From Iphione sp. A-MEVVRFRX5 (taxonomy: Eukaryota), in the NCBI GenBank assembly GCA_976226885.1, contig OZ320316.1:81716001-81780000 (forward strand): a stretch of DNA of 64,000 nucleotides, given 5' to 3'. The notes under the pieces are model-generated. The model made no database searches. It had not been told where the DNA came from and saw only the letters and a program-made list of their open reading frames with translations. The translations under genes were made by a program, and so were the position numbers. Positions 1 to 22,900 of this stretch are shown in pieces. Each line of letters starts with the position of its first letter. The first letter of the stretch is position 1.

Positions 1-960
1 TATGCCATAGTATACTGCTTACTAAGCTAAGTAACTTCAAACTAGGAGCCTATGAGGTCTGTATTGCTAACTACCTATCCTCCCGATACCAAAAAACGGT
101 TGTGAACAGAGCTGAATCGGCAGAATTAGAAGTGGGCTGTGGAGTACCCCAGGGCTCCATATTAGGCCTGCTTCTATTCATCCTCTACATAAATGATCTG
201 CCATCCTTGATAAAGGGTTGTGAAAGTATACTTTATATGGACCACCTGGTCCTCATAGCACATGGAGATGATCTATCTGAGTGCCACAAGAAACTGCAGA
301 GTGGACTAGATCAGTTGAATGACTGGGCAAGAAATAACAGAATCTAAGTGAGTATACCGAATACAAAGATCATGTGATTCGCATACGTGATTCCAGAACT
401 TAATTGATTGGTGAGATTTATTATGGAGGAACGGAGCTATAACAAGTAAATGTTTTTAACTATCTGGGAGTACTAATAGATAAGAACCTATCCTTTAAGT
501 CACATTTGCAATCACTGACCCGGAAGGGGTATGGAAAACTAAATCAATTCTGGAAGATACGAAAATATATGAAACAGGAGTTAGCATGGAAACTAATCAA
601 GACTATTCTGCTACCTGTCACTAACTATGGCCTGGCTTTTGTAAATACCGACACTAGGAAATATGATAAATATGTGACCCTGCGTCAGCGTATCTATCAT
701 TGTGCACTCCCAAGAAAGCCAGATAGAGAGAAGATCAAAGAAGAAGTACTATCATTGATTGAAACTAGTATCATTAGGATGGGATGTGGCCTGAAAATAC
801 CAAAAGATCTTAGCAACAAACACTCCCCCACACATGAATCAAGAACCAGAGAAGGGCAGCGCAGGCAATTGAAAGTAAGAATCAGACCTCAAAATGAAAA
901 TAAAGGCTATCCGTGACATATAAGTTCAAGAACTACTGGCATCACAGTCTAAGTGTAACA
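1..960 (+). mobile_element. Decayed CR1/L2-group LINE fragment (RT C-terminal half and ORF2 C-terminus), running off the window start
   Basis: ORF 102-347 reads GCGVPQGSILGLLLFILYINDLP...LYMD (RT motifs GVPQGS and a degenerate YADD). ORF 506-916 continues with the post-RT region (LSFKSHLQSL...KLIKTILLP..NYG). Stops and frameshifts lie between them. Confidence 0.9.
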
Positions 961-13929: not shown

Positions 13930-16719
13930 CTACTTTGACAAGATATTGCATTTTAAATAGTTTTTAACAATCGTTCTCTTTTGATTGACTATTCTGCCAG
14001 GCAAGCTATTCCATTTTGATGTTGCTTGGTAGATGAAACTTCTTCTGTATTTTTCACTTTTCGGCTTCGGGATATATAGTTGTACCTCTGTACCAGCTCT
14101 TGTTCTAGTCCGCTTTCTTGTCTGACAAAAAGATAAATTATACATGTCAGTTACTAACATCATTGATAGGTAAAGCATTCTTTTATCTAACCTGAATATT
14201 CTTTTCTTAGTTAACCATTCTTCTATCTCTTTGGTCGATACAAATTTATTTAGCACACTCACCCTTATACCCCGATACCATACCCTATTCAGCTTTTGTA
14301 AATCAGTCGACCTGGCTGATAGAAGTAAACCCAGTCCGAAATCCACATGTGGTTGAACAAATGCCAGAAAGAATTTTCCTCTCAAAGACAGGTTTAACTC
14401 TCGTTTGCACCTACCCAATAGATGACTAACTGTATTTATTCTCTTTAACTTGTCTTCAATAAAGGGCCTAAATGTCAATTTTGAGTCAAGTCTATAGCCT
14501 AAAAATTTGAATTCCTTTACGTTTCCTAGGTCTACACCATCTAACTTTACATCCAACCTAAATCCTTCAGCTCGACCAAAACACATTATTTTAGATTTTT
14601 GTTTATTAAAAACTAAGCCATTAGTCTTACACCAGTCACCAATTCTATTCACAGAGTATTGCAACTTCTGCCTAAGGGCCCATGCACTCGATGCTGAGGC
14701 CACTACTGTTATATCATCAGCGTACACTATCAATTCACATGGCTTTGCTACATCAAAAATATCGTTTATAGCTATGATGAACAATAGTGGCCCCAGCACC
14801 GATCCCTGCGGTACACCAATGGAGACAGGTAGCGGATCGGATATTCTATTGTTGCACTTCACACATTGAGATCTTCCAGTCAAATATGATGTTACCCAAT
14901 TTAGAATACTGTCCCCGAATCCATAGTTTTTCAGTTTACGTATTAATAAGTCATGCTGTATCATATCGAAAGCTTTCGACATATCTAAAAAAGCCCCTGC
15001 TACATATTTCCCCAAATTAATTTGTTCATAGATGTCCCTTAGTAATACCGCACTTGCTAGTCCCGTCCCTCTCTGCCTTCTAAAACCGAACTGGTTTTTG
15101 TTAAATATTTCCTGCTCCTCCATGTATTGATAAAGTTGATCAAAGACAATTTTTTCCAGCAGTTTACTGGGAGCCGGCAGTATAGTGACGGGCCTATAGT
15201 TGCTAGCTTCAGCTCTGTTGCCCTTCTTGTATAATGGAACGACCTCTCCCTTCTTCCAATCCTCGGGAATGACACTACTCCTCAAGGATAGATTAAGCAA
15301 TTCCGTGAAAAAATAACCAGTGCATTTAAGGGCTGCTTGTAATAACCTCATAGAGATACCCCTTATTCCCGATGGCTTATTTAATTTTAACTTGCTAATT
15401 AACTTGAAAACTGCTGAATAATGTACTTCTTCAAATTTTAACAACCCTGTTTGTACATGTTCACCCACATCAGCTATTAATTGTGCCGGTACAGACATTT
15501 TCTTAATTGTCTCCACAAATACGGTGTTCATTATATTTGGTACCTCCGAACTATCCACTATCGTACCCTGATACTTTATCGTTAATTCTTGTCCACTAGT
15601 TTGAGTCTTCCCAAATGCTAATTGGTTAATAAAACCCCACAATTTACGATCATTTCCCTCAAATTGTTCAAATTTTGCTCTAATTAATTCTCTACGCTCT
15701 GTTTTGATTAAACTATTAGTAGTATTGCGATAAAAGGCCCAAATTCTTTTGTAATCCACATTGCCAGTTGTTATCCACTTTTTCCGATAATAATCACGTT
15801 CTTTCTTAACCTGATAGATTTTATCACTACCACCACCCCTACGTAATATAGGGCCCTCCCGTTGTACCCAGGGACACAAGCTATCTAACACTTTTGTGAC
15901 ATTACTGACCCATAGTCCCCAACACTCATCCACTGTCATCTTCTTGTCCCAACTCCAATCACATTCATCCAGTTTCTCTTTTAGTTTATAAAACGAATAG
16001 TTGGTCATGTCTCTTGCCAAATAACTTTTTACCCTCTTCCTATGGGACTGCTTCTTATAATTCACATAGATTAGTAGGTGGTCGCTGCTTCCTTGATATA
16101 TCACCCCCCCACTATGATACTCAGTCGGTGAAACATATAGATGATCGAGACATGCTAATTTATCATGGGTTGACTGATTTATTATTTGAGTTAACCCTAA
16201 ATCCATAGAGAAATCCTTACAATGCCTTTGGTCCTTATTTCTTTTTAACCAGTTTACATTAAAATCTCCAAATATAGTCACGTTCATTTTGCCAAACTTG
16301 TTTATTATTTTTACATTATTTTTAATATCACTCAGCAAAAGTTCAAGATTCCCATTTGGGGGTCTGTAAATCAGGTAAACTATATGCATTTTTCGATTCC
16401 CAGGTTTTATTTTGACACAGATCACCTCCCCGTGTTGATCCATTCTACACCCTTCACTGATAGTCTCAGAGTAGAAGTCGTCTCTTACATACATCAAGAC
16501 ACCTCCTCCACGCTTCTTACCAATTCTTACATAGTCTCTGTCCAACCTATGACATCTAAAACCCCCCATTCCTACCATATCATCCGGGAAAATATCCGAT
16601 AACCATGTCTCACAAATCCCCATGACATCTATTCCCTTACATTTTAAAATACCCGAAATTTCATCCAGCTTGCCTAACATGCTCCTGCAATTCCACATCG
16701 CCATTCGAAAATACTTCAT
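13930..16719 (-). CDS. LINE ORF2: apurinic-type endonuclease + reverse transcriptase (929 aa from first ATG), no C-terminal zinc knuckle
   Basis: EN motifs: WNCRS, GICETWL, YRPP, GDFN, LDHLY, SDH. RT motifs: NYRPVTILPAPSKLLEK, QFGFR, FLDMSKAFD, GVPQGSVLGPLLF, YADD, FLG. The C-terminus YIPKPKSEKYRRSFIYQATSKWNSLP is typical of the CR1/L2 group. The track start at 16725 is a TTG; the first ATG is at 16719. Confidence 0.97.
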   Translation of the reverse strand: MKYFRMAMWNCRSMLGKLDEISGILKCKGIDVMGICETWLSDIFPDDMVGMGGFRCHRLDRDYVRIGKKRGGGVLMYVRDDFYSETISEGCRMDQHGEVICVKIKPGNRKMHIVYLIYRPPNGNLELLLSDIKNNVKIINKFGKMNVTIFGDFNVNWLKRNKDQRHCKDFSMDLGLTQIINQSTHDKLACLDHLYVSPTEYHSGGVIYQGSSDHLLIYVNYKKQSHRKRVKSYLARDMTNYSFYKLKEKLDECDWSWDKKMTVDECWGLWVSNVTKVLDSLCPWVQREGPILRRGGGSDKIYQVKKERDYYRKKWITTGNVDYKRIWAFYRNTTNSLIKTERRELIRAKFEQFEGNDRKLWGFINQLAFGKTQTSGQELTIKYQGTIVDSSEVPNIMNTVFVETIKKMSVPAQLIADVGEHVQTGLLKFEEVHYSAVFKLISKLKLNKPSGIRGISMRLLQAALKCTGYFFTELLNLSLRSSVIPEDWKKGEVVPLYKKGNRAEASNYRPVTILPAPSKLLEKIVFDQLYQYMEEQEIFNKNQFGFRRQRGTGLASAVLLRDIYEQINLGKYVAGAFLDMSKAFDMIQHDLLIRKLKNYGFGDSILNWVTSYLTGRSQCVKCNNRISDPLPVSIGVPQGSVLGPLLFIIAINDIFDVAKPCELIVYADDITVVASASSAWALRQKLQYSVNRIGDWCKTNGLVFNKQKSKIMCFGRAEGFRLDVKLDGVDLGNVKEFKFLGYRLDSKLTFRPFIEDKLKRINTVSHLLGRCKRELNLSLRGKFFLAFVQPHVDFGLGLLLSARSTDLQKLNRVWYRGIRVSVLNKFVSTKEIEEWLTKKRIFRLDKRMLYLSMMLVTDMYNLSFCQTRKRTRTRAGTEVQLYIPKPKSEKYRRSFIYQATSKWNSLPGRIVNQKRTIVKNYLKCNILSK

Positions 16720-16877
16720 AGTCAATTTTGTATTTAGTAAAACGACAGTATGAAACGGGGGGCTCCAAGAAAAAACAGATAAACTAAATTCTTTTAATTA
16801 AGAATAACACACCTTACCTATTCAACACCACACCTATTCAACATAGAATCCGTGAACAATAATGGGAATAATACTTA

Positions 16878-17516
16878 CTACAACTGGCCAAACATGATTG
16901 CTATAGCAGATTCAATGCTATGCGCCCAGTCCCTCAGTACCCAGCCATCAGGGTGACATCCATCGTATAGATGCTGATACCTGCATCTAAAACGTTTCCC
17001 ACACCAACTATGCACTGGGAGTGCTGTTGTCGGAGTGTAGATGTTGCTCTGAATATTCAGATCTCTGAAAACATCATTAACAATAACAACCGTATCTGTT
17101 AACAGGCTTTGAAAACTATTCGATGCGGTTTCAGGACTGTACTGAAATAGATTAATACCACTAATAGGCATATACCCAAAGCGCATCTCCGAACCTCGAT
17201 TTCTTATGCGTGCTTTAAGCTCGGAGTGAAATGCTCGTAGCCATAAAGACCACATATTCGGATCATCATGAATAATAGTTAGTTGCTTAGTCACAGGGTC
17301 CCGCTTACAGAGATTATTTATCCCAAGAAATAGGTACAATAAATCATACATGATGACATTTAAGTTGTCCACATTATTCAGAACCCAGTCTAATTTTGCA
17401 CCCGGTTGAAATACCACATCTATATATATATCACGCTGTTGAAACCAATAGTGATCAATATATTGACTTAACATTCTACCCCGGGAATCTGATACAATCA
17501 GTACTCTATAGACCAT
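16878..17516 (-). CDS. Stand-alone SGNH/GDSL-type hydrolase (esterase), 212 aa, middle ORF of the LINE
   Basis: Block I LIVSDSRG (nucleophile Ser), block II PGAK, block III LFLGINN and block V YDGCHP (DxxH). True ATG at 17516; separated from ORF1 and ORF2 by non-coding spacers. Confidence 0.88.
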   Translation of the reverse strand: MVYRVLIVSDSRGRMLSQYIDHYWFQQRDIYIDVVFQPGAKLDWVLNNVDNLNVIMYDLLYLFLGINNLCKRDPVTKQLTIIHDDPNMWSLWLRAFHSELKARIRNRGSEMRFGYMPISGINLFQYSPETASNSFQSLLTDTVVIVNDVFRDLNIQSNIYTPTTALPVHSWCGKRFRCRYQHLYDGCHPDGWVLRDWAHSIESAIAIMFGQL

Positions 17517-17886
17517 TGTCTACACTTTTCAGTTTATATTCCAGTCTTCTACTTTTAACAATATCCCGTGTGGGCAGACAGTTGCCCTACACTATATCCG
17601 GTCGTGCCAGGTTTTCAGACGTATACAACTCCACCTCCAGTCATGGACACGTGTAGTCTGTTTAAACATAATACAGAAAGATAAGCAGCGATCCTATTAA
17701 TAATAACATAACATCTATTTGCGACAGTAACAAAATCACCGCTCCATTACTCAAGGCAATGAGACACTATAGCCAAACATCTTAATATTTCCAGGTGACT
17801 CAACATATGGTCTAATACTAATGTAATAATGATAATACATAGTCCTCCTTGTCACCGTCAGCGTATATCCCTGTATGTAAGTCCAT

Positions 17887-18007
17887 GGGTAGACACTTAC
17901 TCCATGGGATATGTACTATAAATATAGATTACAACTCGGGTAGACACTTACCGCAGAGCAGTAGAATATAATACAAAAAGATTCACTCTCGGGTAGACAC
18001 TTACCGC
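17887..18007 (-). repeat. Three ~52-bp diverged units with conserved core GTAAGTGTCTACCC (sense of the LINE)
   Basis: gggtagacacttac at 17887, 17938 and ~17991 on the + strand; the intervening sequences share tataa...agatt.ca.ctc. Confidence 0.85.
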
Positions 18008-18105
18008 TGAGGGAATAACCAGAATATCCTTATCAGTCACCTAGCACGACACCCACCAATCGGCCCGTCAGAAAATTCCTGTAAAGAGAACAATATTACA
18101 GAGAA

Positions 18106-19851
18106 TTAGATAAAGCCACGAATCATTTCCAACATCCGACCATACTCATTCTCTCCTGGATAGTCTGTGCTGTCTAGTGTTTTGTCCCAGTAGGCCTTAC
18201 CAGCGCCCCACCACTTATCTTTCGAAGCAAGTATCAGGGACATATCCCCAGTACCTTTGAGTGCCGCTGCTGCTAACTTGTTTTGCTGGAATTTCGCAGT
18301 CAGTCCCACACGAAGTGTCATGCGAGATAACTGGTCCCAGTCCTTGGTAGGTTTACACGTGTTTCCTAATGTTCTTGCTCTTCGTGGATTCTCCTCCAAT
18401 AAAATTCGATGTCGAAGACCCTCGTCCCCACACACTCTCGCTCGTTCAGCTTGAAAATGGTGTTCCGTGGTCTCAAATCGTTCGCCCCTGACCACAAATG
18501 GTGTCCGGGAGAAACTAGAGAGCTGCGTGTGCTCTTCTCGAATTACCACTGCAGACTGCACTTCTTTACAGCACGCCTTGTCAATATTCAAATTTTCCGG
18601 CAAACAGTCCAGCCTATCATACGAATACTCGACCCCGTCGACTCGCAGATTCAGACCACGCACCATGGCCTTGCTACCCTGCCCCCTTGCCAGGTCCGCA
18701 ATCATATGCAGATTTCGGTGCCGGTCCTTCAGACTTTCCGGGATGTCCTCTTTTAGAAACACCCTCTTCAGTGCCTCGATCTTACGTAACTGGCTTCGGC
18801 GTGAAAACAGGCTGTTCCTAGCTTCTATGCAGGAAAATCGAACCAGAATAGGTCGTGGTCTATTCATAGGCCTGCCCAGTCTTGTTGCCGACAGTATCGC
18901 ATCCGGACCCAAGTTCGAGTCAATTTTGCAGAATATACCACTGATCAAGTCCCATGTTGTCATCGATTCCTCCTCTTTCAAGTTTTCAACAATTAAGTTT
19001 TGCCTTCTTGCATCAATTTCCATCGTTTCCACTTTGTGCTTCAGACTGTCATTTTCCTGTTCTAACACATGCACCCTTGAATTCAGAATTTGACCAACAC
19101 CCGTTAGATCTTTTATTTTTGCAGTTACATCGGATTTCCATGCCTTATCAGCTGTCATCATTTTGTTTAATGATTCGACTAGGGTTTCAGTTTTCGTCCC
19201 AATCAGAGTCACCTTCTTATCCAATGACCCTAGCTTCTGACCAAGGTCAGAGCTGGTTTCAAGGCTCGTCTGCACAGATTTTAATGAATTCTTTATCTCC
19301 ATCTGAGCACGAAAAACACATATCAACGCTTCCCGAATATCCATATTAACTATATCTTCCTCAGTAATCTCGTTAGAGGGGTCAGTATTCGGCAATGGTA
19401 CTTCGGGGTCTGGTAATGTCGACTCAGATGGCCCTACTGGCATAACAGGAGACATTGGGATAGAGGTGCTGATATTTAATAACACAGAGTCAGTATTGTC
19501 CAACATACCTGTATCAATTTGGTCATCAGGCACCTCAGTTGCCCTCGGGGGAAGTGGCGATATCCCTGAACGCTGCCCCTCAGTAAGTGCATGCACCAGC
19601 GCAGACATTACTTGGATCGCCTCTTGTCCTATGGGACTGGTGCTATTAATAGTACCGTCCACCGCTCCTTTTCCACCCGCACCCGGCTGAGGTAACTCAA
19701 CGTCGACGTTGTGGGCTTCATTTCTTGTTTCTCCTCCATTTTCCGGTATTTGACTATTCAATGAGTTCCCTTTTCCAGGTAAAGACGACTTGTCAGACCT
19801 GGTTGTCATTTGGTGCGTCGGTTGCGTTGGTTGACGGCCTTTAAATGGCAT
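18106..19851 (-). CDS. LINE ORF1: low-complexity N-terminus + coiled coil + L1/Transposase_22-type RRM-CTD + C-terminal NADAR (YbiA-like) domain (~581 aa from ATG 19851)
   Basis: Heptad region LKSVQTSLE...VLEQENDSLKHKVETMEIDARRQNLIVENLKE. RRM signature RLG...RPRPILVRF...RNSLF, then VFLKED and a CTD (LRVDGVEY). NADAR at 18106-18537: LSSF..TPFVVRGERFETTEHHFQAER, ARTLG, DW, AKFQQN, LKGTG, DKWWGAG, GENEYGRMLEMIR. The track start at 19977 probably lies outside the element. Confidence 0.9.
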   Translation of the reverse strand: MPFKGRQPTQPTHQMTTRSDKSSLPGKGNSLNSQIPENGGETRNEAHNVDVELPQPGAGGKGAVDGTINSTSPIGQEAIQVMSALVHALTEGQRSGISPLPPRATEVPDDQIDTGMLDNTDSVLLNISTSIPMSPVMPVGPSESTLPDPEVPLPNTDPSNEITEEDIVNMDIREALICVFRAQMEIKNSLKSVQTSLETSSDLGQKLGSLDKKVTLIGTKTETLVESLNKMMTADKAWKSDVTAKIKDLTGVGQILNSRVHVLEQENDSLKHKVETMEIDARRQNLIVENLKEEESMTTWDLISGIFCKIDSNLGPDAILSATRLGRPMNRPRPILVRFSCIEARNSLFSRRSQLRKIEALKRVFLKEDIPESLKDRHRNLHMIADLARGQGSKAMVRGLNLRVDGVEYSYDRLDCLPENLNIDKACCKEVQSAVVIREEHTQLSSFSRTPFVVRGERFETTEHHFQAERARVCGDEGLRHRILLEENPRRARTLGNTCKPTKDWDQLSRMTLRVGLTAKFQQNKLAAAALKGTGDMSLILASKDKWWGAGKAYWDKTLDSTDYPGENEYGRMLEMIRGFI

Positions 19852-19898
19852 TTTCCTTTGATTTTTCTTGGAGCCACCGAGTTCACGTCTACTCACTA

Positions 19899-19917
19899 GC
19901 CGCCATCTTATGCAAAT
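19899..19917 (-). promoter_or_regulatory. Candidate internal promoter/start of the LINE: YY1-like AAGATGGCGGC abutting an octamer ATTTGCAT
   Basis: The sense strand reads aaATTTGCATAAGATGGCGGCtag ~50 nt upstream of the ORF1 ATG. YY1 sites at the 5' end are established for L1 internal promoters; function here is inferred. Confidence 0.45.
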
Positions 19918-22900
19918 TTCACATGACATGAAGATATGATTTGTGAAGACACAGTGACAGCAGGATTTTAAATTCATCTATATATAAAAAAAAATATACG
20001 TACTATTCATTTTGCTGCAAGTACCATCTTGCGTTTTTAAAAGACGTTTCATCAGCAAATACTGCAGGATTAATTCTTCTTGAGAAACGCTCCCCACTAG
20101 ACTTCTTTTGATGAATTTGGATAAGTATCATCATTTTTTAAAAATTCAGGACAGCTGTTTACAACATGAGGGTCAGCCAACCCTGTTGAGTATGTAAACC
20201 AGTATTCTTCAGTTAAAGCTTTCTAACACTATGAGTGGTATTATATGCTGGTGGAGTTCGTGTAGGGAATATGCATAAAATATTACATAAAGGATATATA
20301 CAATGAATGATGAATAGTTACTGAGATCCAGTTTCACAAACATCCGGTTATATATATGAATAGCTGCCCCATCATAGCAGCCCCATCATGACACACATTT
20401 TTGAGTTGGACTTAATTGCTGGATGATACACTTGCCCATACATTACAAAAGGCCCAACATGCAAACTGCTAGCCAAATGGACTGGTTTGGACTCGGAGAT
20501 GCGGGCAGCGACTTTTCTTTGACAGAAACGTGTCTGTACGGTTGACCCGTCTCTCGAGAACAGCCGCCTCCACGATGCATTGACTCGGAGGGTGAGGTCA
20601 CCGTCCCGCTCAACCCGCCGAACACCACCCTCGGACCTCATGCAATTTTCTCGGTGGGGAAAATACGAGCAGGGGAAACAATGGTGGCGCCTCGGCGACC
20701 ACGGGTGCCCTTATTGCCAATTAATTCCGCCAAAGTGTGGCACAGCAAGTGAAGATGCCTTAGACAGCAGTTCCCTCTATCAGAGCGACCTGACAACATC
20801 AGAACCCTGGCTGTGCCAATGAGATCGATATTCTTCTATATAGTGTGCCACAATCGAGCAGCCATAGGTACAGAGGCCATATTCCAAACTCTATGTAGAT
20901 AACAAGGTATTCATTCTCGTAGCAGTAGCTGTGAGAAATAGTTTGCCTACTTGAAGAGACACGACAAAAGAAGATCAGTGCAGTGTACTTGAAGGAAATA
21001 CGCGTACCACTGTTGAGTCATTGCTTTCAGTACAGGTTGTCTGATTCTATTGTACCGTGCGGCCGATGTCCATTAGGGTGAGTTCCCACACAACGAGAAT
21101 TCAAGAGACGTAAGGAAAATAGCCCAGGTGCAAAATGAAGTGGTAAATATACTTCTCATTCTGCTGTAGATGCAGCAATGTACTTCGTCGTGTTTGCCAC
21201 GAGAAGTGCTCAGACGATTCCCTATGTGTCACAATGCGTGAATATTCGAAAGGAATTCTTCATTATATGAAAGGAGCCCCGTCTTTATGTAGCAGCGAAA
21301 GGCAGAGTCTGATCTGCCGAGCTGTTCTGAGTTCTCTGGTCAGCAGGATTAGGAGCAGCTCGGGAGGCGCAGACACAGGAAATTGGTGGGCCTATCCACC
21401 CGACACGTCGTGGTTCACCGGGTGAAGGTAAAAGACGATAGGGACATGCAGACCGGCCTTTCACAAGCCCCCAAGGGAGGCAGCAGAGAGCGACTGGTGA
21501 TGACAACATGGCCGAGCGGCCTGTCACAGCAAACCTGTCATTATCTGCATGGAGTTGACGGATTCTTTGCGCAAATGACGCTTGTCGTTCCGTGTGCGAC
21601 GGCCAACAGTCGGGCACAATGAAACCTGGCATGAAAGGAAATAGAAATCTCGACACGAGGACAGGATGCCGAAAAACCCATGCTCGAGACGCGAATGATG
21701 CAAAAACTGCATGGGAGAGAGAGTGATCCTGTTAAAACAAGTACAACTATCTCCTCCAGCTCTTTTAATCCTTAAATCCTCTTCGCCACTCTCTGCCTCT
21801 CATCGATTAAAACGGAAAGTAGATTATAATCGTGATGCGTCAACTGCCTGAGACCTAGACGCCATTAGAGTTCATAGCCCCCTATCCATACAGCAGCACT
21901 TCAAAGATACAGGATGGACGATGTTATCTGTATCGGGTATCTCTCCATCGCTCTCCATGGAAGCAGTGATGGACTTTGGGGTCATTCCACAGCAGACCAA
22001 GTTGCCTAGACCAGCCCAAATTGAACCGTGGACGTGGAGCTGCTCCTGAGATTAACTCATCTGGCTAAAGCCTGATAGTTGGTTGTATTATATTCGCTTG
22101 ATTTTGTCCTAACGATAGATTACACTTTGTGTTAGTTCAGGTCATCTGACACAAATGCATTATAATGGTCACATTTGTTCAAAACTTAATGAACGTGCAG
22201 CTTTGTTTCCCATTATCCCGATCACTGTATTTAGAAATGTCTTTTTTGTTCATCTTACTTTTTATAGGCCTAGATTGCAAAGTGTGACTATAGATTATTT
22301 GACCTTGTTTTAAATGAGAGCATGTCGGTACATGCTTCTGGAAGCATCAAAAAATCTTTTCTTGCCCCCATTGTTTCTCTCTGTTTCCATTAAGCAGTCG
22401 ATACAGGGCGAGTATTGTACGACACAGTCGCGTCCTTTGGCTGTCTCTTGCGCCGACATATACACCTCTATTGGCTTTGAATCAGGGCGGGCCTACTGCT
22501 ACTGCCGTATTTTTGTCAGGCAGGAAAAAGCCTCGGATGTTTAGAGCGATCAACCTATAGGAAGTAAGGAAATAAGCTGCGTTGTAAAGGCTCTTCGATT
22601 CGACTGAATGTCGTCTTCACTTGATTCCCCTTCCATCGGTTCTTTGTAACGTGAACATAGGCAGAGTCTGCAGGAAGATAATTAAATCATTCAAATTATC
22701 CTAATCCTATCATCGACATAGATCCTTTGTCAATGTTAGCAAGGTTTATGTTTGGATAAATGTTTCATTGAAGCAATCACTTGCTGAATCGATATAAGAT
22801 CATATTACGCGGTCCCTGTTGTATAAAGTGCAAATTTAAATATGCATATGAACCCATCCATTTTCGACGTAAGGCTATAAAAGAGCAAGTAAATTACATG

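What the first reader, a model, noticed from the sequence alone, without database searches (positions are those of the whole stretch)
18106..18537. NADAR (YbiA-like ADP-ribosylhydrolase/N-glycosidase) domain fused to LINE ORF1p
Seen: the C-terminal ~143 aa of ORF1 follow the NADAR pattern (LSxF..PF.V.G..F.T.EHxFQA, A+.LG, DW, KF.QN, L..TG, D.WWG.G, G.N..G.ML..IR), in frame after the RRM-CTD. Established: NADARs include the riboflavin-intermediate N-glycosidase YbiA and enzymes that remove ADP-ribose from guanine in DNA (antitoxins of DarT1). Guanine-ADP-ribosylating enzymes exist in animals (pierisins, bivalve CARP-1), and PARP-family proteins act on L1 intermediates. Inference: a NADAR on multi-copy ORF1p would coat the RNP and could erase or read host ADP-ribose marks on the element's RNA, cDNA or target site, which would be an anti-defence system. 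Caveat: the usual Glu of LxEAS is Leu here (LILAS) and the Lys of FQAxK is Arg, so it may be a binder or have altered specificity.
Basis: partly seen in the sequence, partly recalled or inferred. Interest (0 to 1): 0.92.

Follow-up and report, generated by a model that had tools for sequence, protein, structure and literature searches.

The report
NADAR domain on a LINE ORF1 protein
A jumping gene (LINE retrotransposon) in this genome carries, at the end of its RNA-coating protein, a real NADAR domain of the kind that removes ADP-ribose from DNA and RNA bases. The pairing is widespread in related elements and was noted once in print, and this copy has lost a key catalytic residue.

Summary
Observation confirmed, on the minus strand. 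Window 18537-18118 encodes a NADAR domain (Pfam PF08719, 84 bits against a cut-off of 35; fold match to Phytophthora NADAR and YbiA). It sits in frame at the C-terminus of an L1-type ORF1p (coiled coil, RRM, CTD) in an intact three-ORF LINE: ORF1, an SGNH-like ORF, and APE-RT.

The fusion is not a one-off. 59 of the 150 nearest NADAR cluster representatives share the ORF1p N-terminal part. They keep the catalytic set almost invariantly (first Glu 59/59, second Glu 57/59, Lys 50/59). In six of the nine loci examined besides the window, an APE/RT ORF lies downstream. These belong to at least two LINE clades: one L1-type, and one non-L1 group that includes the window.

This copy is a divergent variant: E583L (codon CTT, three changes from GAR), N488S, F479I, K512R, K535R. 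It is therefore probably hydrolysis-impaired, either a binder or a relic.

The anti-defence idea is plausible by analogy with NADAR in invertebrate RNA viruses and phages, but it is untested.

Prior art: Genome Biol 2025 (PMC12477816) notes NADAR in oyster Tx1 LINE ORF1 proteins. This scan also logged 229 NADAR notes, including other ORF1p-NADAR copies elsewhere in this genome.

The parts
13930..19977 (-). Coding span of one intact three-ORF non-LTR retrotransposon (ORF1, SGNH-like ORF, ORF2). The true 5' and 3' ends were not fixed and no target-site duplication was found.
18106..19977 (-). ORF1, 623 codons as listed mechanically. The likely start is the ATG at 19851 (aa 43), giving 581 aa.
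19333..19851 (-). N-terminal low-complexity region of ORF1p, probably disordered (aa 43-215).
   Evidence: pLDDT is below 50 in the single-sequence model. It has no counterpart in the family alignment.
19006..19332 (-). Coiled coil (aa 216-324).
   Evidence: Long helices at model residues 2-25 and 29-110; coiled-coil chains are hit by the family profile.
18742..19005 (-). RRM of an L1-type ORF1p (aa 325-412), with the RRxNL...E hallmark.
   Evidence: (2w7a, 2ykp)
18574..18741 (-). C-terminal domain (CTD) of an L1-type ORF1p (aa 413-468).
   Evidence: (2ykp/2yko chain 3-175, 2ldy)
18109..18573 (-). NADAR domain (aa 469-623). The Pfam match covers aa 481-620, which is nt 18537-18118.
18463..18465 (-). 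Codon GAA for E505, the first active-site Glu (EHxFQ motif). It is retained.
18442..18444 (-). Codon CGA for R512, at the FQAxK Lys position (Lys in 43 of 50 family members, Arg in 5).
18514..18516 (-). Codon AGT for S488, at the SNF Asn position (Asn in 49 of 50 family members).
18229..18231 (-). Codon CTT for L583, at the LxE catalytic Glu position (E125 of P. nicotianae NADAR and of YbiA; Glu in 48 of 50 family members). It is three nucleotide changes away from GAA or GAG.
   Evidence: PMC11543638
17867..18011 (-). Three copies, spaced about 52 nt apart, of a 41-nt repeat in the ORF1-ORFx spacer. The core on the element strand is GTAAGTGTCTACCC.
16878..17516 (-). Separate 212-aa ORF, SGNH/GDSL-hydrolase-like. 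The S, G, N and DxxH motifs are visible, but there is no Pfam hit.
13930..16725 (-). ORF2, 931 aa. APE endonuclease at aa 11-216 (nt 16695-16078) and reverse transcriptase at aa 500-746 (nt 15228-14488). It is not L1-type.

Best explanation
Shown: the last ~155 codons of ORF1 (minus strand) encode a folded NADAR domain. It is fused to a coiled-coil/RRM/CTD ORF1p of an intact three-ORF LINE whose ORF2 is not of the L1 type. The same ORF1p-NADAR module occurs in many diverged LINE lineages. There the NADAR part is at least as conserved as the RNA-binding core, and it keeps the residues that bind the distal ribose and the phosphates of ADP-ribose.

Inferred for the family: ORF1p trimers coat the element's RNA in many copies. 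This places an N-glycosidase of the ADP-ribosyl-base type on the RNP. It would strip ADP-ribose (on guanine N2 or cytidine) or a related adduct from the element's RNA, cDNA or target DNA. This parallels the NADAR and Macro domains of invertebrate RNA-virus polyproteins and the phage NADARs that neutralise DarT1.

Inferred for this copy: the second catalytic acid is Leu, the SNF Asn is Ser, and two phosphate- or adenine-contacting Lys are Arg, while the fold-defining positions are kept. The domain here is therefore most likely hydrolysis-impaired. It would be kept either as an ADP-ribose/nucleotide-binding or structural module, or tolerated because the element is young.
For: Domain identity.

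ORF1p identity: the family profile hits human L1 ORF1p 2ykp at 1.1e-16 and 2ldy at 4e-12; Foldseek gives TM 0.68.

Family breadth: 59 of the 150 best NADAR representatives, each standing for a 50%-identity cluster, have a homologous ORF1p N-terminal part.

Catalytic columns in those 59: first Glu 59/59, Lys 50 plus Arg 7, second Glu 57/59, Asp 49, and the Trp of the xWG motif 47.

Conservation: median per-member mean pairwise identity is 35% for NADAR against 29% for RRM-CTD.

Linkage to APE/RT: the window, the P0127 contig, L002, L005 and L007, L009 and L010.

Two clades: the L005 ORF2 hits human L1 ORF2p at 1e-71, whereas the window ORF2 scores only 42.8 bits on the RT core.

This copy's substitutions.

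Biochemistry: D171A/N (equivalent to E125) loses efficient hydrolysis; K95R works in vitro but does not rescue in vivo; a eukaryotic non-DarT NADAR hydrolyses guanine-ADPr (PMC11543638). A sponge NADAR removes cytidine-ADPr, and ScARP modifies both DNA and RNA (PMC12945103). NADAR occurs in annelid/bivalve picornaviruses, nidoviruses and hepe-like viruses, where it is read as countering host ADP-ribosylation (PMC9503650).

Precedent for a hydrophobic residue at the Glu position in a likely sensor context: proteins with EF-hand, ion-channel, cNMP-binding and two NADAR domains carry Phe there.
Against: No substrate, binding or mobility data exist for any ORF1p-NADAR.

No ADP-ribosyltransferase was examined in this genome.

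Several ADP-ribose contacts of the P. nicotianae enzyme (R79, R93) are not conserved even in the canonical fused family, so the substrate may differ from ADPr-guanine.

I could not fetch other copies from this genome. Whether Leu583 is a lineage trait under selection or a private change is therefore not shown. Only unchecked scan notes (s1-339648, s1-317839) say the variant recurs.

The NADAR tree is unresolved, and the window's branch is twice the median length.
Confidence: 0.5

Rival explanations
1. The fusion is real, but the role is RNA metabolism rather than counter-defence. The NADAR would process an NAD- or ADP-ribose-derived group made during the element's own RNA life cycle: an NAD cap, ADP-ribose phosphate products of RNA-end healing, or a cap-proximal step. 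This follows proposals for KptA-linked NADARs and the example of the NADAR protein SNA-3 in the nematode SL1 snRNP.
For: SNA-3 is an essential nuclear RNP protein with three NADAR domains. Mutating the residues homologous to YbiA's catalytic ones impairs it, and it contacts CBC-ARS2 (PMC9303266). NADAR is linked by context to RNA repair and to capping enzymes (PMC9503650). mRNA cap methyltransferase-NADAR clusters of giant viruses appear. Multi-NADAR proteins are among the best hits (P0001). R79 and R93 are not conserved in the fused family.
Against: No RNA-ligase, KptA or capping domain is present in the element. The only activities demonstrated for NADARs are N-glycosidic cleavage of riboflavin intermediates and of base-linked ADP-ribose (PMC11543638, PMC12945103).
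Confidence: 0.2
2. This copy's NADAR is still an active hydrolase, with altered chemistry or specificity, using E505 and D587 without the second Glu.
For: E505, W547, D587, W590 and G591 are kept. In DarT1-linked NADARs the superfamily-aligned Glu (E173) is dispensable and another acid does the job. Phage NADARs have His at this position, and K95R is active in vitro (PMC11543638).
Against: There is no acid at either the E125-equivalent position (L583) or the D171-equivalent position (L581). Leu cannot hydrogen-bond the distal ribose. The SNF Asn, which is Asn in 49 of 50 members, is also lost.
Confidence: 0.15
3. In this copy the NADAR is a functionless passenger. Catalysis was lost in a lineage that no longer needs it, and the domain is on its way to decay.
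For: Three near-invariant positions are changed. Only 37 of 47 conserved columns are kept, which ties for third-lowest of 51. The terminal branch is long. Two other fused representatives also lack the Glu (P0081, P0136).
Against: The ORF is open for 623 codons in an element with all three ORFs intact. Fold-defining positions are all kept (K562, F563, Q565, N566, T576, G608, N610, G613, L616, R620). NADAR is not more diverged than this copy's own RRM-CTD: the identity ratio is 1.20 against a family median of 1.23, rank 20 of 51. The Leu codon is three changes from Glu, so the change is old relative to this insertion.
Confidence: 0.12
4. The domain is a YbiA-like metabolic enzyme (riboflavin-intermediate N-glycosidase), or a host exon joined to the ORF by chance.
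For: TIGR02464 (riboflavin intermediates N-glycosidase) passes its cut-off.
Against: The same fusion lies next to APE/RT ORFs in six independent loci besides the window. The ORF is continuous, and the model has pTM 0.79 across the domains. A metabolic role gives no reason for linkage to an RNA-coating protein.
Confidence: 0.02

Closest known systems
ORF1 proteins of Tx1 LINEs of Crassostrea gigas in Repbase, noted to carry YbiA-family NADAR domains (PMC12477816, Genome Biol 2025)
   Same: A NADAR domain on the ORF1 protein of a non-LTR retrotransposon of a lophotrochozoan. L005 here is an L1/Tx1-type example of the same module.
   Different: The window's ORF2 is not L1/Tx1-type: 42.8 bits to human L1 ORF2p on the RT core only, against 245 bits for L005. 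The element has an extra SGNH-like ORF, and this copy lacks the second catalytic Glu. The paper gives one passage with no residue analysis and no survey.
Ectocarpus Gypsy LTR retrotransposons with a NADAR domain at the N-terminus of Pol (PMC12477816)
   Same: A retroelement that has captured a YbiA-family NADAR.
   Different: It is an LTR element in a brown alga. The domain is on Pol rather than on the RNA-coating protein, and it appears to have been acquired independently from bacteria.
DarG1 NADAR antitoxins and the orphan NADARs of T4-like phages that neutralise DarT1 (PMC11543638, PMC11825919)
   Same: The same fold and the same first Glu, Lys and Asp-x-x-Trp set. A mobile element carries the eraser to protect its own nucleic acid.
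   Different: Those belong to the BC4488 family, with a catalytic Asp two residues upstream and an N-terminal DNA-binding extension. They stand alone and have a known partner toxin. Here there is no ART partner and no such Asp (L581), and the domain is fused to ORF1p.
NADAR and Macro domains in polyproteins of invertebrate positive-strand RNA viruses (annelid/bivalve picornaviruses, nidoviruses, hepe-like viruses; PMC9503650)
   Same: A NADAR embedded in the replication or packaging machinery of an RNA-based genetic parasite of invertebrates, with a proposed role against host ADP-ribosylation.
   Different: Those are viral polyproteins next to an RdRp. No relationship between the viral and LINE NADARs was resolved here.
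Type II (L1-type) ORF1p and type IV (esterase) ORF1 of CR1/L2-group LINEs (PMC4120745)
   Same: The coiled coil, RRM and CTD architecture; the modular, reticulate gain of accessory domains (PHD, esterase) on ORF1; and an SGNH esterase associated with LINEs.
   Different: NADAR is not among the ORF1 modules catalogued there. Here the esterase is a separate ORF alongside a type II ORF1.

Membership tests
NADAR superfamily (Pfam PF08719) | Profile match above the curated cut-off | tested here: met
   84.1 bits against 35.1, E 1.7e-23, aa 481-620
NADAR superfamily (Pfam PF08719) | NADAR fold (helical core flanked by small beta sheets) | tested here: met
   AF2 model with pLDDT 93.6; Foldseek gives 8bau E 1.5e-8 at TM 0.70 and 2b3w at TM 0.70
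NADAR superfamily (Pfam PF08719) | First active-site Glu (E43 of P. nicotianae NADAR, E48 of YbiA) and the Asp-x-x-Trp-Gly motif | tested here: met
   E505, D587, W590 and G591 are present
NADAR superfamily (Pfam PF08719) | Phosphate/adenine-binding Lys of FQAxK (K50 of P. nicotianae NADAR, K95 of E. coli C7 NADAR) | tested here: inconclusive
   It is Arg512 here. K95R hydrolyses in vitro but fails to rescue in vivo (PMC11543638).
YbiA family of NADAR (defined by the conserved Glu, E125) | Glu in the LxE(A/S) strand | tested here: not met
   Leu583, codon CTT, and no acid at L581 either. The fused family as a whole meets it, 57 of 59.
YbiA family of NADAR | N-glycosidase or ADP-ribosyl-base hydrolase activity | not testable with these tools
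   This needs a purified domain and ADP-ribosylated substrates.
DarTG1 antitoxin NADAR (BC4488 family) | A neighbouring DarT1-type ADP-ribosyltransferase and a catalytic Asp (D171 position) | tested here: not met
   The element's ORFs are ORF1, an SGNH-like ORF and APE-RT only. The D171-equivalent residue is L581.
L1-type (type II) ORF1p, Transposase_22 | Coiled coil followed by RRM and CTD | tested here: met
   The family profile hits 2ykp/2yko at 1e-16, 2ldy at 4e-12 and 2w7a at 1e-8. Foldseek gives 2ykp TM 0.68.
L1-type (type II) ORF1p, Transposase_22 | Pfam PF02994 match by the single sequence | tested here: not met
   No hit for the window protein at E up to 1, and only 1 of 51 family members hits. 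The relationship is visible only at the profile and structure level.
Non-LTR retrotransposon (LINE) | APE endonuclease and reverse transcriptase in a downstream ORF | tested here: met
   RVT_1 at 134.7 bits and Exo_endo_phos at 32.6 bits
L1/Tx1 clade of LINEs | ORF2 alignable to L1 ORF2p across both APE and RT | tested here: not met
   The window ORF2 scores 42.8 bits to human L1 ORF2p on the RT core only, and R2 scores higher at 50 bits. The L005 ORF2 scores 245 bits over residues 2-710. The window's clade was not assigned. The C-terminal RSF..WNxLP motif recalls the CR1/L2/Jockey group, but that is from memory and was not tested.

The most novel reading that the evidence does not exclude
ORF1p-NADAR is a retrotransposon counter-defence. 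Under this reading, lophotrochozoan hosts use base-directed ADP-ribosyltransferases (pierisin/CARP-1-like or PARP-like) to mark retroelement and RNA-virus nucleic acids. LINEs of several clades have exchanged an ORF1p module that erases the mark on the RNP. Glu-less variants such as this copy would then be readers or decoys that bind the mark without removing it. This would be an animal counterpart of the DarT/NADAR phage-bacterium conflict.
Probability: 0.2. Interest if true: 0.85.

Novelty: new variant of a known kind. Interest (0 to 1): 0.55.

Why it matters
NADAR enzymes were only recently shown to erase ADP-ribose from guanine and cytidine. They are rare in animal proteins and absent from vertebrates.

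A NADAR that is conserved, catalytic residues intact, on the multi-copy RNA-coating protein of LINEs from more than one clade points to an unrecognised step in invertebrate retrotransposition. That step would involve an ADP-ribose-type nucleic-acid modification, whether as host defence or as RNA processing. Natural Glu-containing and Glu-less versions sitting side by side give a ready-made pair for testing it.

The value of this particular finding is limited by three things. The fusion has already been mentioned in print. This copy is the catalytically doubtful variant. Nothing about its function has been measured.

Tried and rejected
- Two word-indexed searches with ORF1 (the NADAR region, then the whole protein) found nothing at E <= 0.001.
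- The exact-sequence look-up found none of the three ORFs. No second copy from this genome could therefore be fetched, and the window holds only this copy.
- The single-sequence AF2 model failed (pLDDT 38).
- Pfam Transposase_22 does not hit the window protein.
- A FastTree tree of 151 NADAR domains was unresolved. It needs 31 label changes, and the window sits on a long branch joined to another long branch, so no statement on single or multiple capture, or on viral origin, is made.
- The target-site duplication search gave only an 8-mer, which is expected by chance.
- dN/dS on four copies of the P0005 family (L007-L010) was uninformative: 2-6 nt differences per 1152 nt, none of them non-synonymous in NADAR.
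- No homologue of the SGNH-like ORF was found in loci L001-L006 or among 207 fetched proteins.
- Literature searches for DUF1768+ORF1 and NADAR+non-LTR found nothing beyond PMC12477816.
- The source organism was not identified. Atlas taxa for the nearest ORF1p-NADAR clusters are annelid.
Full report
**What is at the coordinates**

The stretch 18106-18537 read on the plus strand is full of stops. On the minus strand it is the end of a 623-codon ORF, 19977..18106. The likely start is the ATG at 19851.

Downstream on the same strand are two more ORFs. One is a 212-aa ORF at 17516..16878. The other is a 931-aa ORF at 16725..13930 with an APE endonuclease (Exo_endo_phos, 32.6 bits) and a reverse transcriptase (RVT_1, 134.7 bits). 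The locus is therefore one intact three-ORF non-LTR retrotransposon. It is the only copy in the window; the only other related piece is a short RT fragment at 6-383.

**The NADAR call**

- Pfam PF08719 matches ORF1 aa 481-620 at 84.1 bits (cut-off 35.1, E 1.7e-23).
- NCBIfam TIGR02464 passes its cut-off, 82.6 against 73.7 bits.
- phmmer finds E. coli YbiA (2b3w) at 2.9e-10.
- A single-sequence AF2 model was useless (pLDDT 38).
- With a 51-row alignment of relatives (A1) the model of aa 215-623 reached pLDDT 93.6 and pTM 0.79.
- Foldseek against the PDB returned P. nicotianae NADAR with ADP-ribose (8bau, E 1.5e-8, TM 0.70), then YbiA (TM 0.70), then the human LINE-1 ORF1p trimer (2ykp, TM 0.68).

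**The rest of ORF1**

Pfam Transposase_22 does not hit the window protein, and it hits only 1 of the 51 relatives. The profile of A1, however, hits human L1 ORF1p 2ykp/2yko at 1e-16, 2ldy (named differently in the two tool outputs: '40 kDa ORF1 product', human LINE-1 ORF1p RRM-CTD) at 4e-12 and the human RRM 2w7a at 1e-8. It also hits 8bau at 3.8e-35 and YbiA at 1e-30.

The model shows a long helix, a four-stranded RRM, a small CTD and then NADAR. So this is a type II (L1-type) ORF1p carrying a C-terminal NADAR. It is preceded by about 170 residues that are poorly modelled and absent from the relatives.

**How general the fusion is**

An exhaustive HMMER scan of 1.84 billion representatives with the NADAR part gave 4461 hits. 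The best 150 are at most about 40% identical to the query.

Of these 150, 59 have an N-terminal part homologous to window ORF1 aa ~230-480. Most are 390-480 aa long with NADAR at the C-terminus.

In these 59 the active-site columns are close to invariant:
- first Glu 59/59
- Lys 50, plus Arg 7
- second Glu 57/59
- Asp 49
- the Trp after the Asp (the xWG motif) 47
- the Trp of the DW motif 57

Across the alignment, the median of each member's mean pairwise identity to the others is 35% for NADAR against 29% for RRM-CTD. The accessory domain is thus at least as constrained as the RNA-binding core.

The ESM Atlas holds clusters of 53-124 proteins of 415-489 aa, all carrying NADAR, with annelid records, at a feature score of 0.91-0.92.

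**Linkage to reverse transcriptases**

Besides the window, an APE/RT ORF lies downstream of ORF1p-NADAR in the following loci:
- the P0127 contig (RVT_1 protein of 1020 aa)
- L002 (ORF1-NADAR of 681 aa plus an ORF2 29% identical to the window's)
- L005
- three of the four loci of the P0005 family (L007, L009, L010) from different samples; L008 ends inside its ORF2.

The four ORF1 genes of the P0005 family differ by only 2-6 nt in 1152. That family is therefore young and probably active.

The L005 ORF2 aligns to human L1 ORF2p over both APE and RT (245 bits, 1e-71). The window ORF2 reaches only 42.8 bits, on the RT core alone, and scores slightly higher against R2.

The window, L002, L003 and L010 ORF2s are mutually alignable over their full length at 26-43% identity. 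L005 matches them only in the RT core. The module therefore sits in at least two deeply separated LINE clades, one L1-type and one not. This fits the modular, reticulate evolution of ORF1 described for CR1/L2/Jockey elements, in which type II ORF1 occurs outside L1 (PMC4120745). I did not assign the window's clade. Its C-terminal RSF..WNxLP motif recalls CR1/L2/Jockey, but that is from memory only.

**This copy's active site**

I numbered 8bau from the printed alignment and used the residue roles given in PMC11543638. That paper reports that E43 and E125 hold the distal ribose, that K50, R79, W89, R93, D130 and W133 hold the phosphates, and that the E125-equivalent D171A/N change loses efficient hydrolysis.

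On that basis the window protein keeps E505, W547, D587 and W590. It has R512 for K50, N539 for R79 and L583 for E125. There is no acid at L581, the D171-equivalent position.

It also differs at F479 (Phe in 49 of 50 relatives), N488 of the SNF motif (Asn in 49 of 50) and K535 (Lys in 42 of 50). Overall it keeps 37 of 47 columns that are at least 80% conserved, tying for third-lowest of 51. The two members closest to it in this ranking that also lack the Glu are P0136 and P0081.

The other near-invariant positions, which I take to be fold-defining, are all kept: K562, F563, Q565, N566, T576, G608, N610, G613, L616 and R620. The NADAR part is not disproportionately diverged relative to this copy's own RRM-CTD: 30% against 25% identity, a ratio of 1.20 against a family median of 1.23.

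The Leu codon CTT is three changes from GAA or GAG. The change is therefore not a recent one-step lesion of this insertion.

My reading is that this domain is folded but hydrolysis-impaired.

A hydrophobic residue at this position recurs elsewhere. A set of proteins that combine EF-hands, an ion channel, a cyclic-nucleotide-binding domain and two NADARs carry Phe there. In that setting a ligand-sensing role looks more likely than catalysis. This is a precedent, not proof, for a binding-only NADAR.

**Function**

Nothing was measured. The best-supported mechanism for the family is an N-glycosidase acting on base-linked ADP-ribose, or on a close chemical relative, delivered in many copies by ORF1p to the element's own RNA, cDNA or target site.

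The support is by analogy:
- NADARs of several classes, including a eukaryotic one, erase guanine-N2 ADP-ribose (PMC11543638).
- A sponge NADAR and YbiA-type enzymes erase cytidine ADP-ribose, and the pierisin-family enzyme ScARP modifies both DNA and RNA (PMC12945103).
- Phages carry orphan NADARs to defeat DarT1 (PMC11825919).
- RNA viruses of annelids, bivalves, crustaceans, insects and nematodes carry NADAR in their polyproteins, largely in place of Macro domains (PMC9503650).

The main rival is a role in RNA processing, as suggested by SNA-3 of the nematode SL1 snRNP (PMC9303266) and by links between NADAR and capping or RNA-repair systems (PMC9503650). R79 and R93 are not conserved even in canonical fused members, which leaves the substrate open.

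**Prior knowledge**

PMC12477816 (Genome Biol 2025) reports NADAR on Ectocarpus Gypsy Pol. [quoted passage not shown] I found no other paper on NADAR in non-LTR elements.

This scan holds 229 notes that mention NADAR. All eight that were listed lie in this genome; seven describe ORF1p-NADAR copies and the eighth a PolB-NADAR fusion. The notes also include this same stretch and the three-ORF element, and notes that a Glu-less subtype recurs in diverged families. I could not check the last claim because no other copy of this genome is reachable with these tools.

**Verdict**

The fusion is an old, selected and widespread LINE module, not a curiosity of this locus. As a kind it is already in print, but only in a single sentence.

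The points added here are:
- the breadth of the family
- the near-invariance of its catalytic set
- its presence in non-L1 as well as L1-type LINEs
- its coexistence with a separate SGNH-like ORF
- the finding that this copy is a variant lacking the second catalytic acid

The anti-defence mechanism remains a hypothesis.

Noticed in passing
window 16878-17516 (-): A separate 212-aa ORF lies between ORF1 and ORF2, with S (VSDSRG), G, N (GINN) and DxxH (DGCH) motifs. It has no Pfam hit, but its ESM Atlas feature score is 0.96 to clusters carrying Lipase_GDSL_2. It is an SGNH esterase encoded as its own ORF beside a type II ORF1. No homologue was found in related loci L001-L006.
   Followed up: partly
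window 17867-18011 (-): Three copies of a 41-nt repeat, spaced 51-53 nt apart, lie in the 590-nt ORF1-ORFx spacer. They share the core GTAAGTGTCTACCC on the element strand. Their function is unknown.
   Followed up: partly
window 6-383 (+): A short reverse-transcriptase fragment, 36% identical to ORF2 aa 591-717, lies at the window edge. It is a remnant of another LINE.
   Followed up: no
P0007, P0042, P0045 (also P0105, P0113, P0117): Proteins of 1100-1435 aa combine EF-hands, an ion-transport domain, a cyclic-nucleotide-binding domain and two NADAR domains. In at least one NADAR domain Phe replaces the catalytic Glu. They may be ADP-ribose-type ligand-gated channels with NADAR as the sensor.
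   Followed up: partly
P0070 (3063 aa): A protein with two NADAR domains followed by a C-5 cytosine DNA methylase domain. P0001 and P0039 are proteins made of three to five NADAR repeats.
   Followed up: no
L007-L010: The four ORF1-NADAR genes (383 aa, canonical active site) from four different samples differ by 2-6 nt per 1152. In each locus ORF1 is followed by a 92-aa ORF that overlaps the start of ORF2 (1046 aa in L010). This is probably a currently active LINE.
   Followed up: partly
ESM Atlas result, structure row 3: A mollusc cluster of 425-aa proteins, 78% of them carrying Impact_N (PF01205), is structurally similar (TM 0.53) to an ORF1p-NADAR cluster. It may be another accessory domain on an ORF1p-like scaffold. 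This is a lead only.
   Followed up: no
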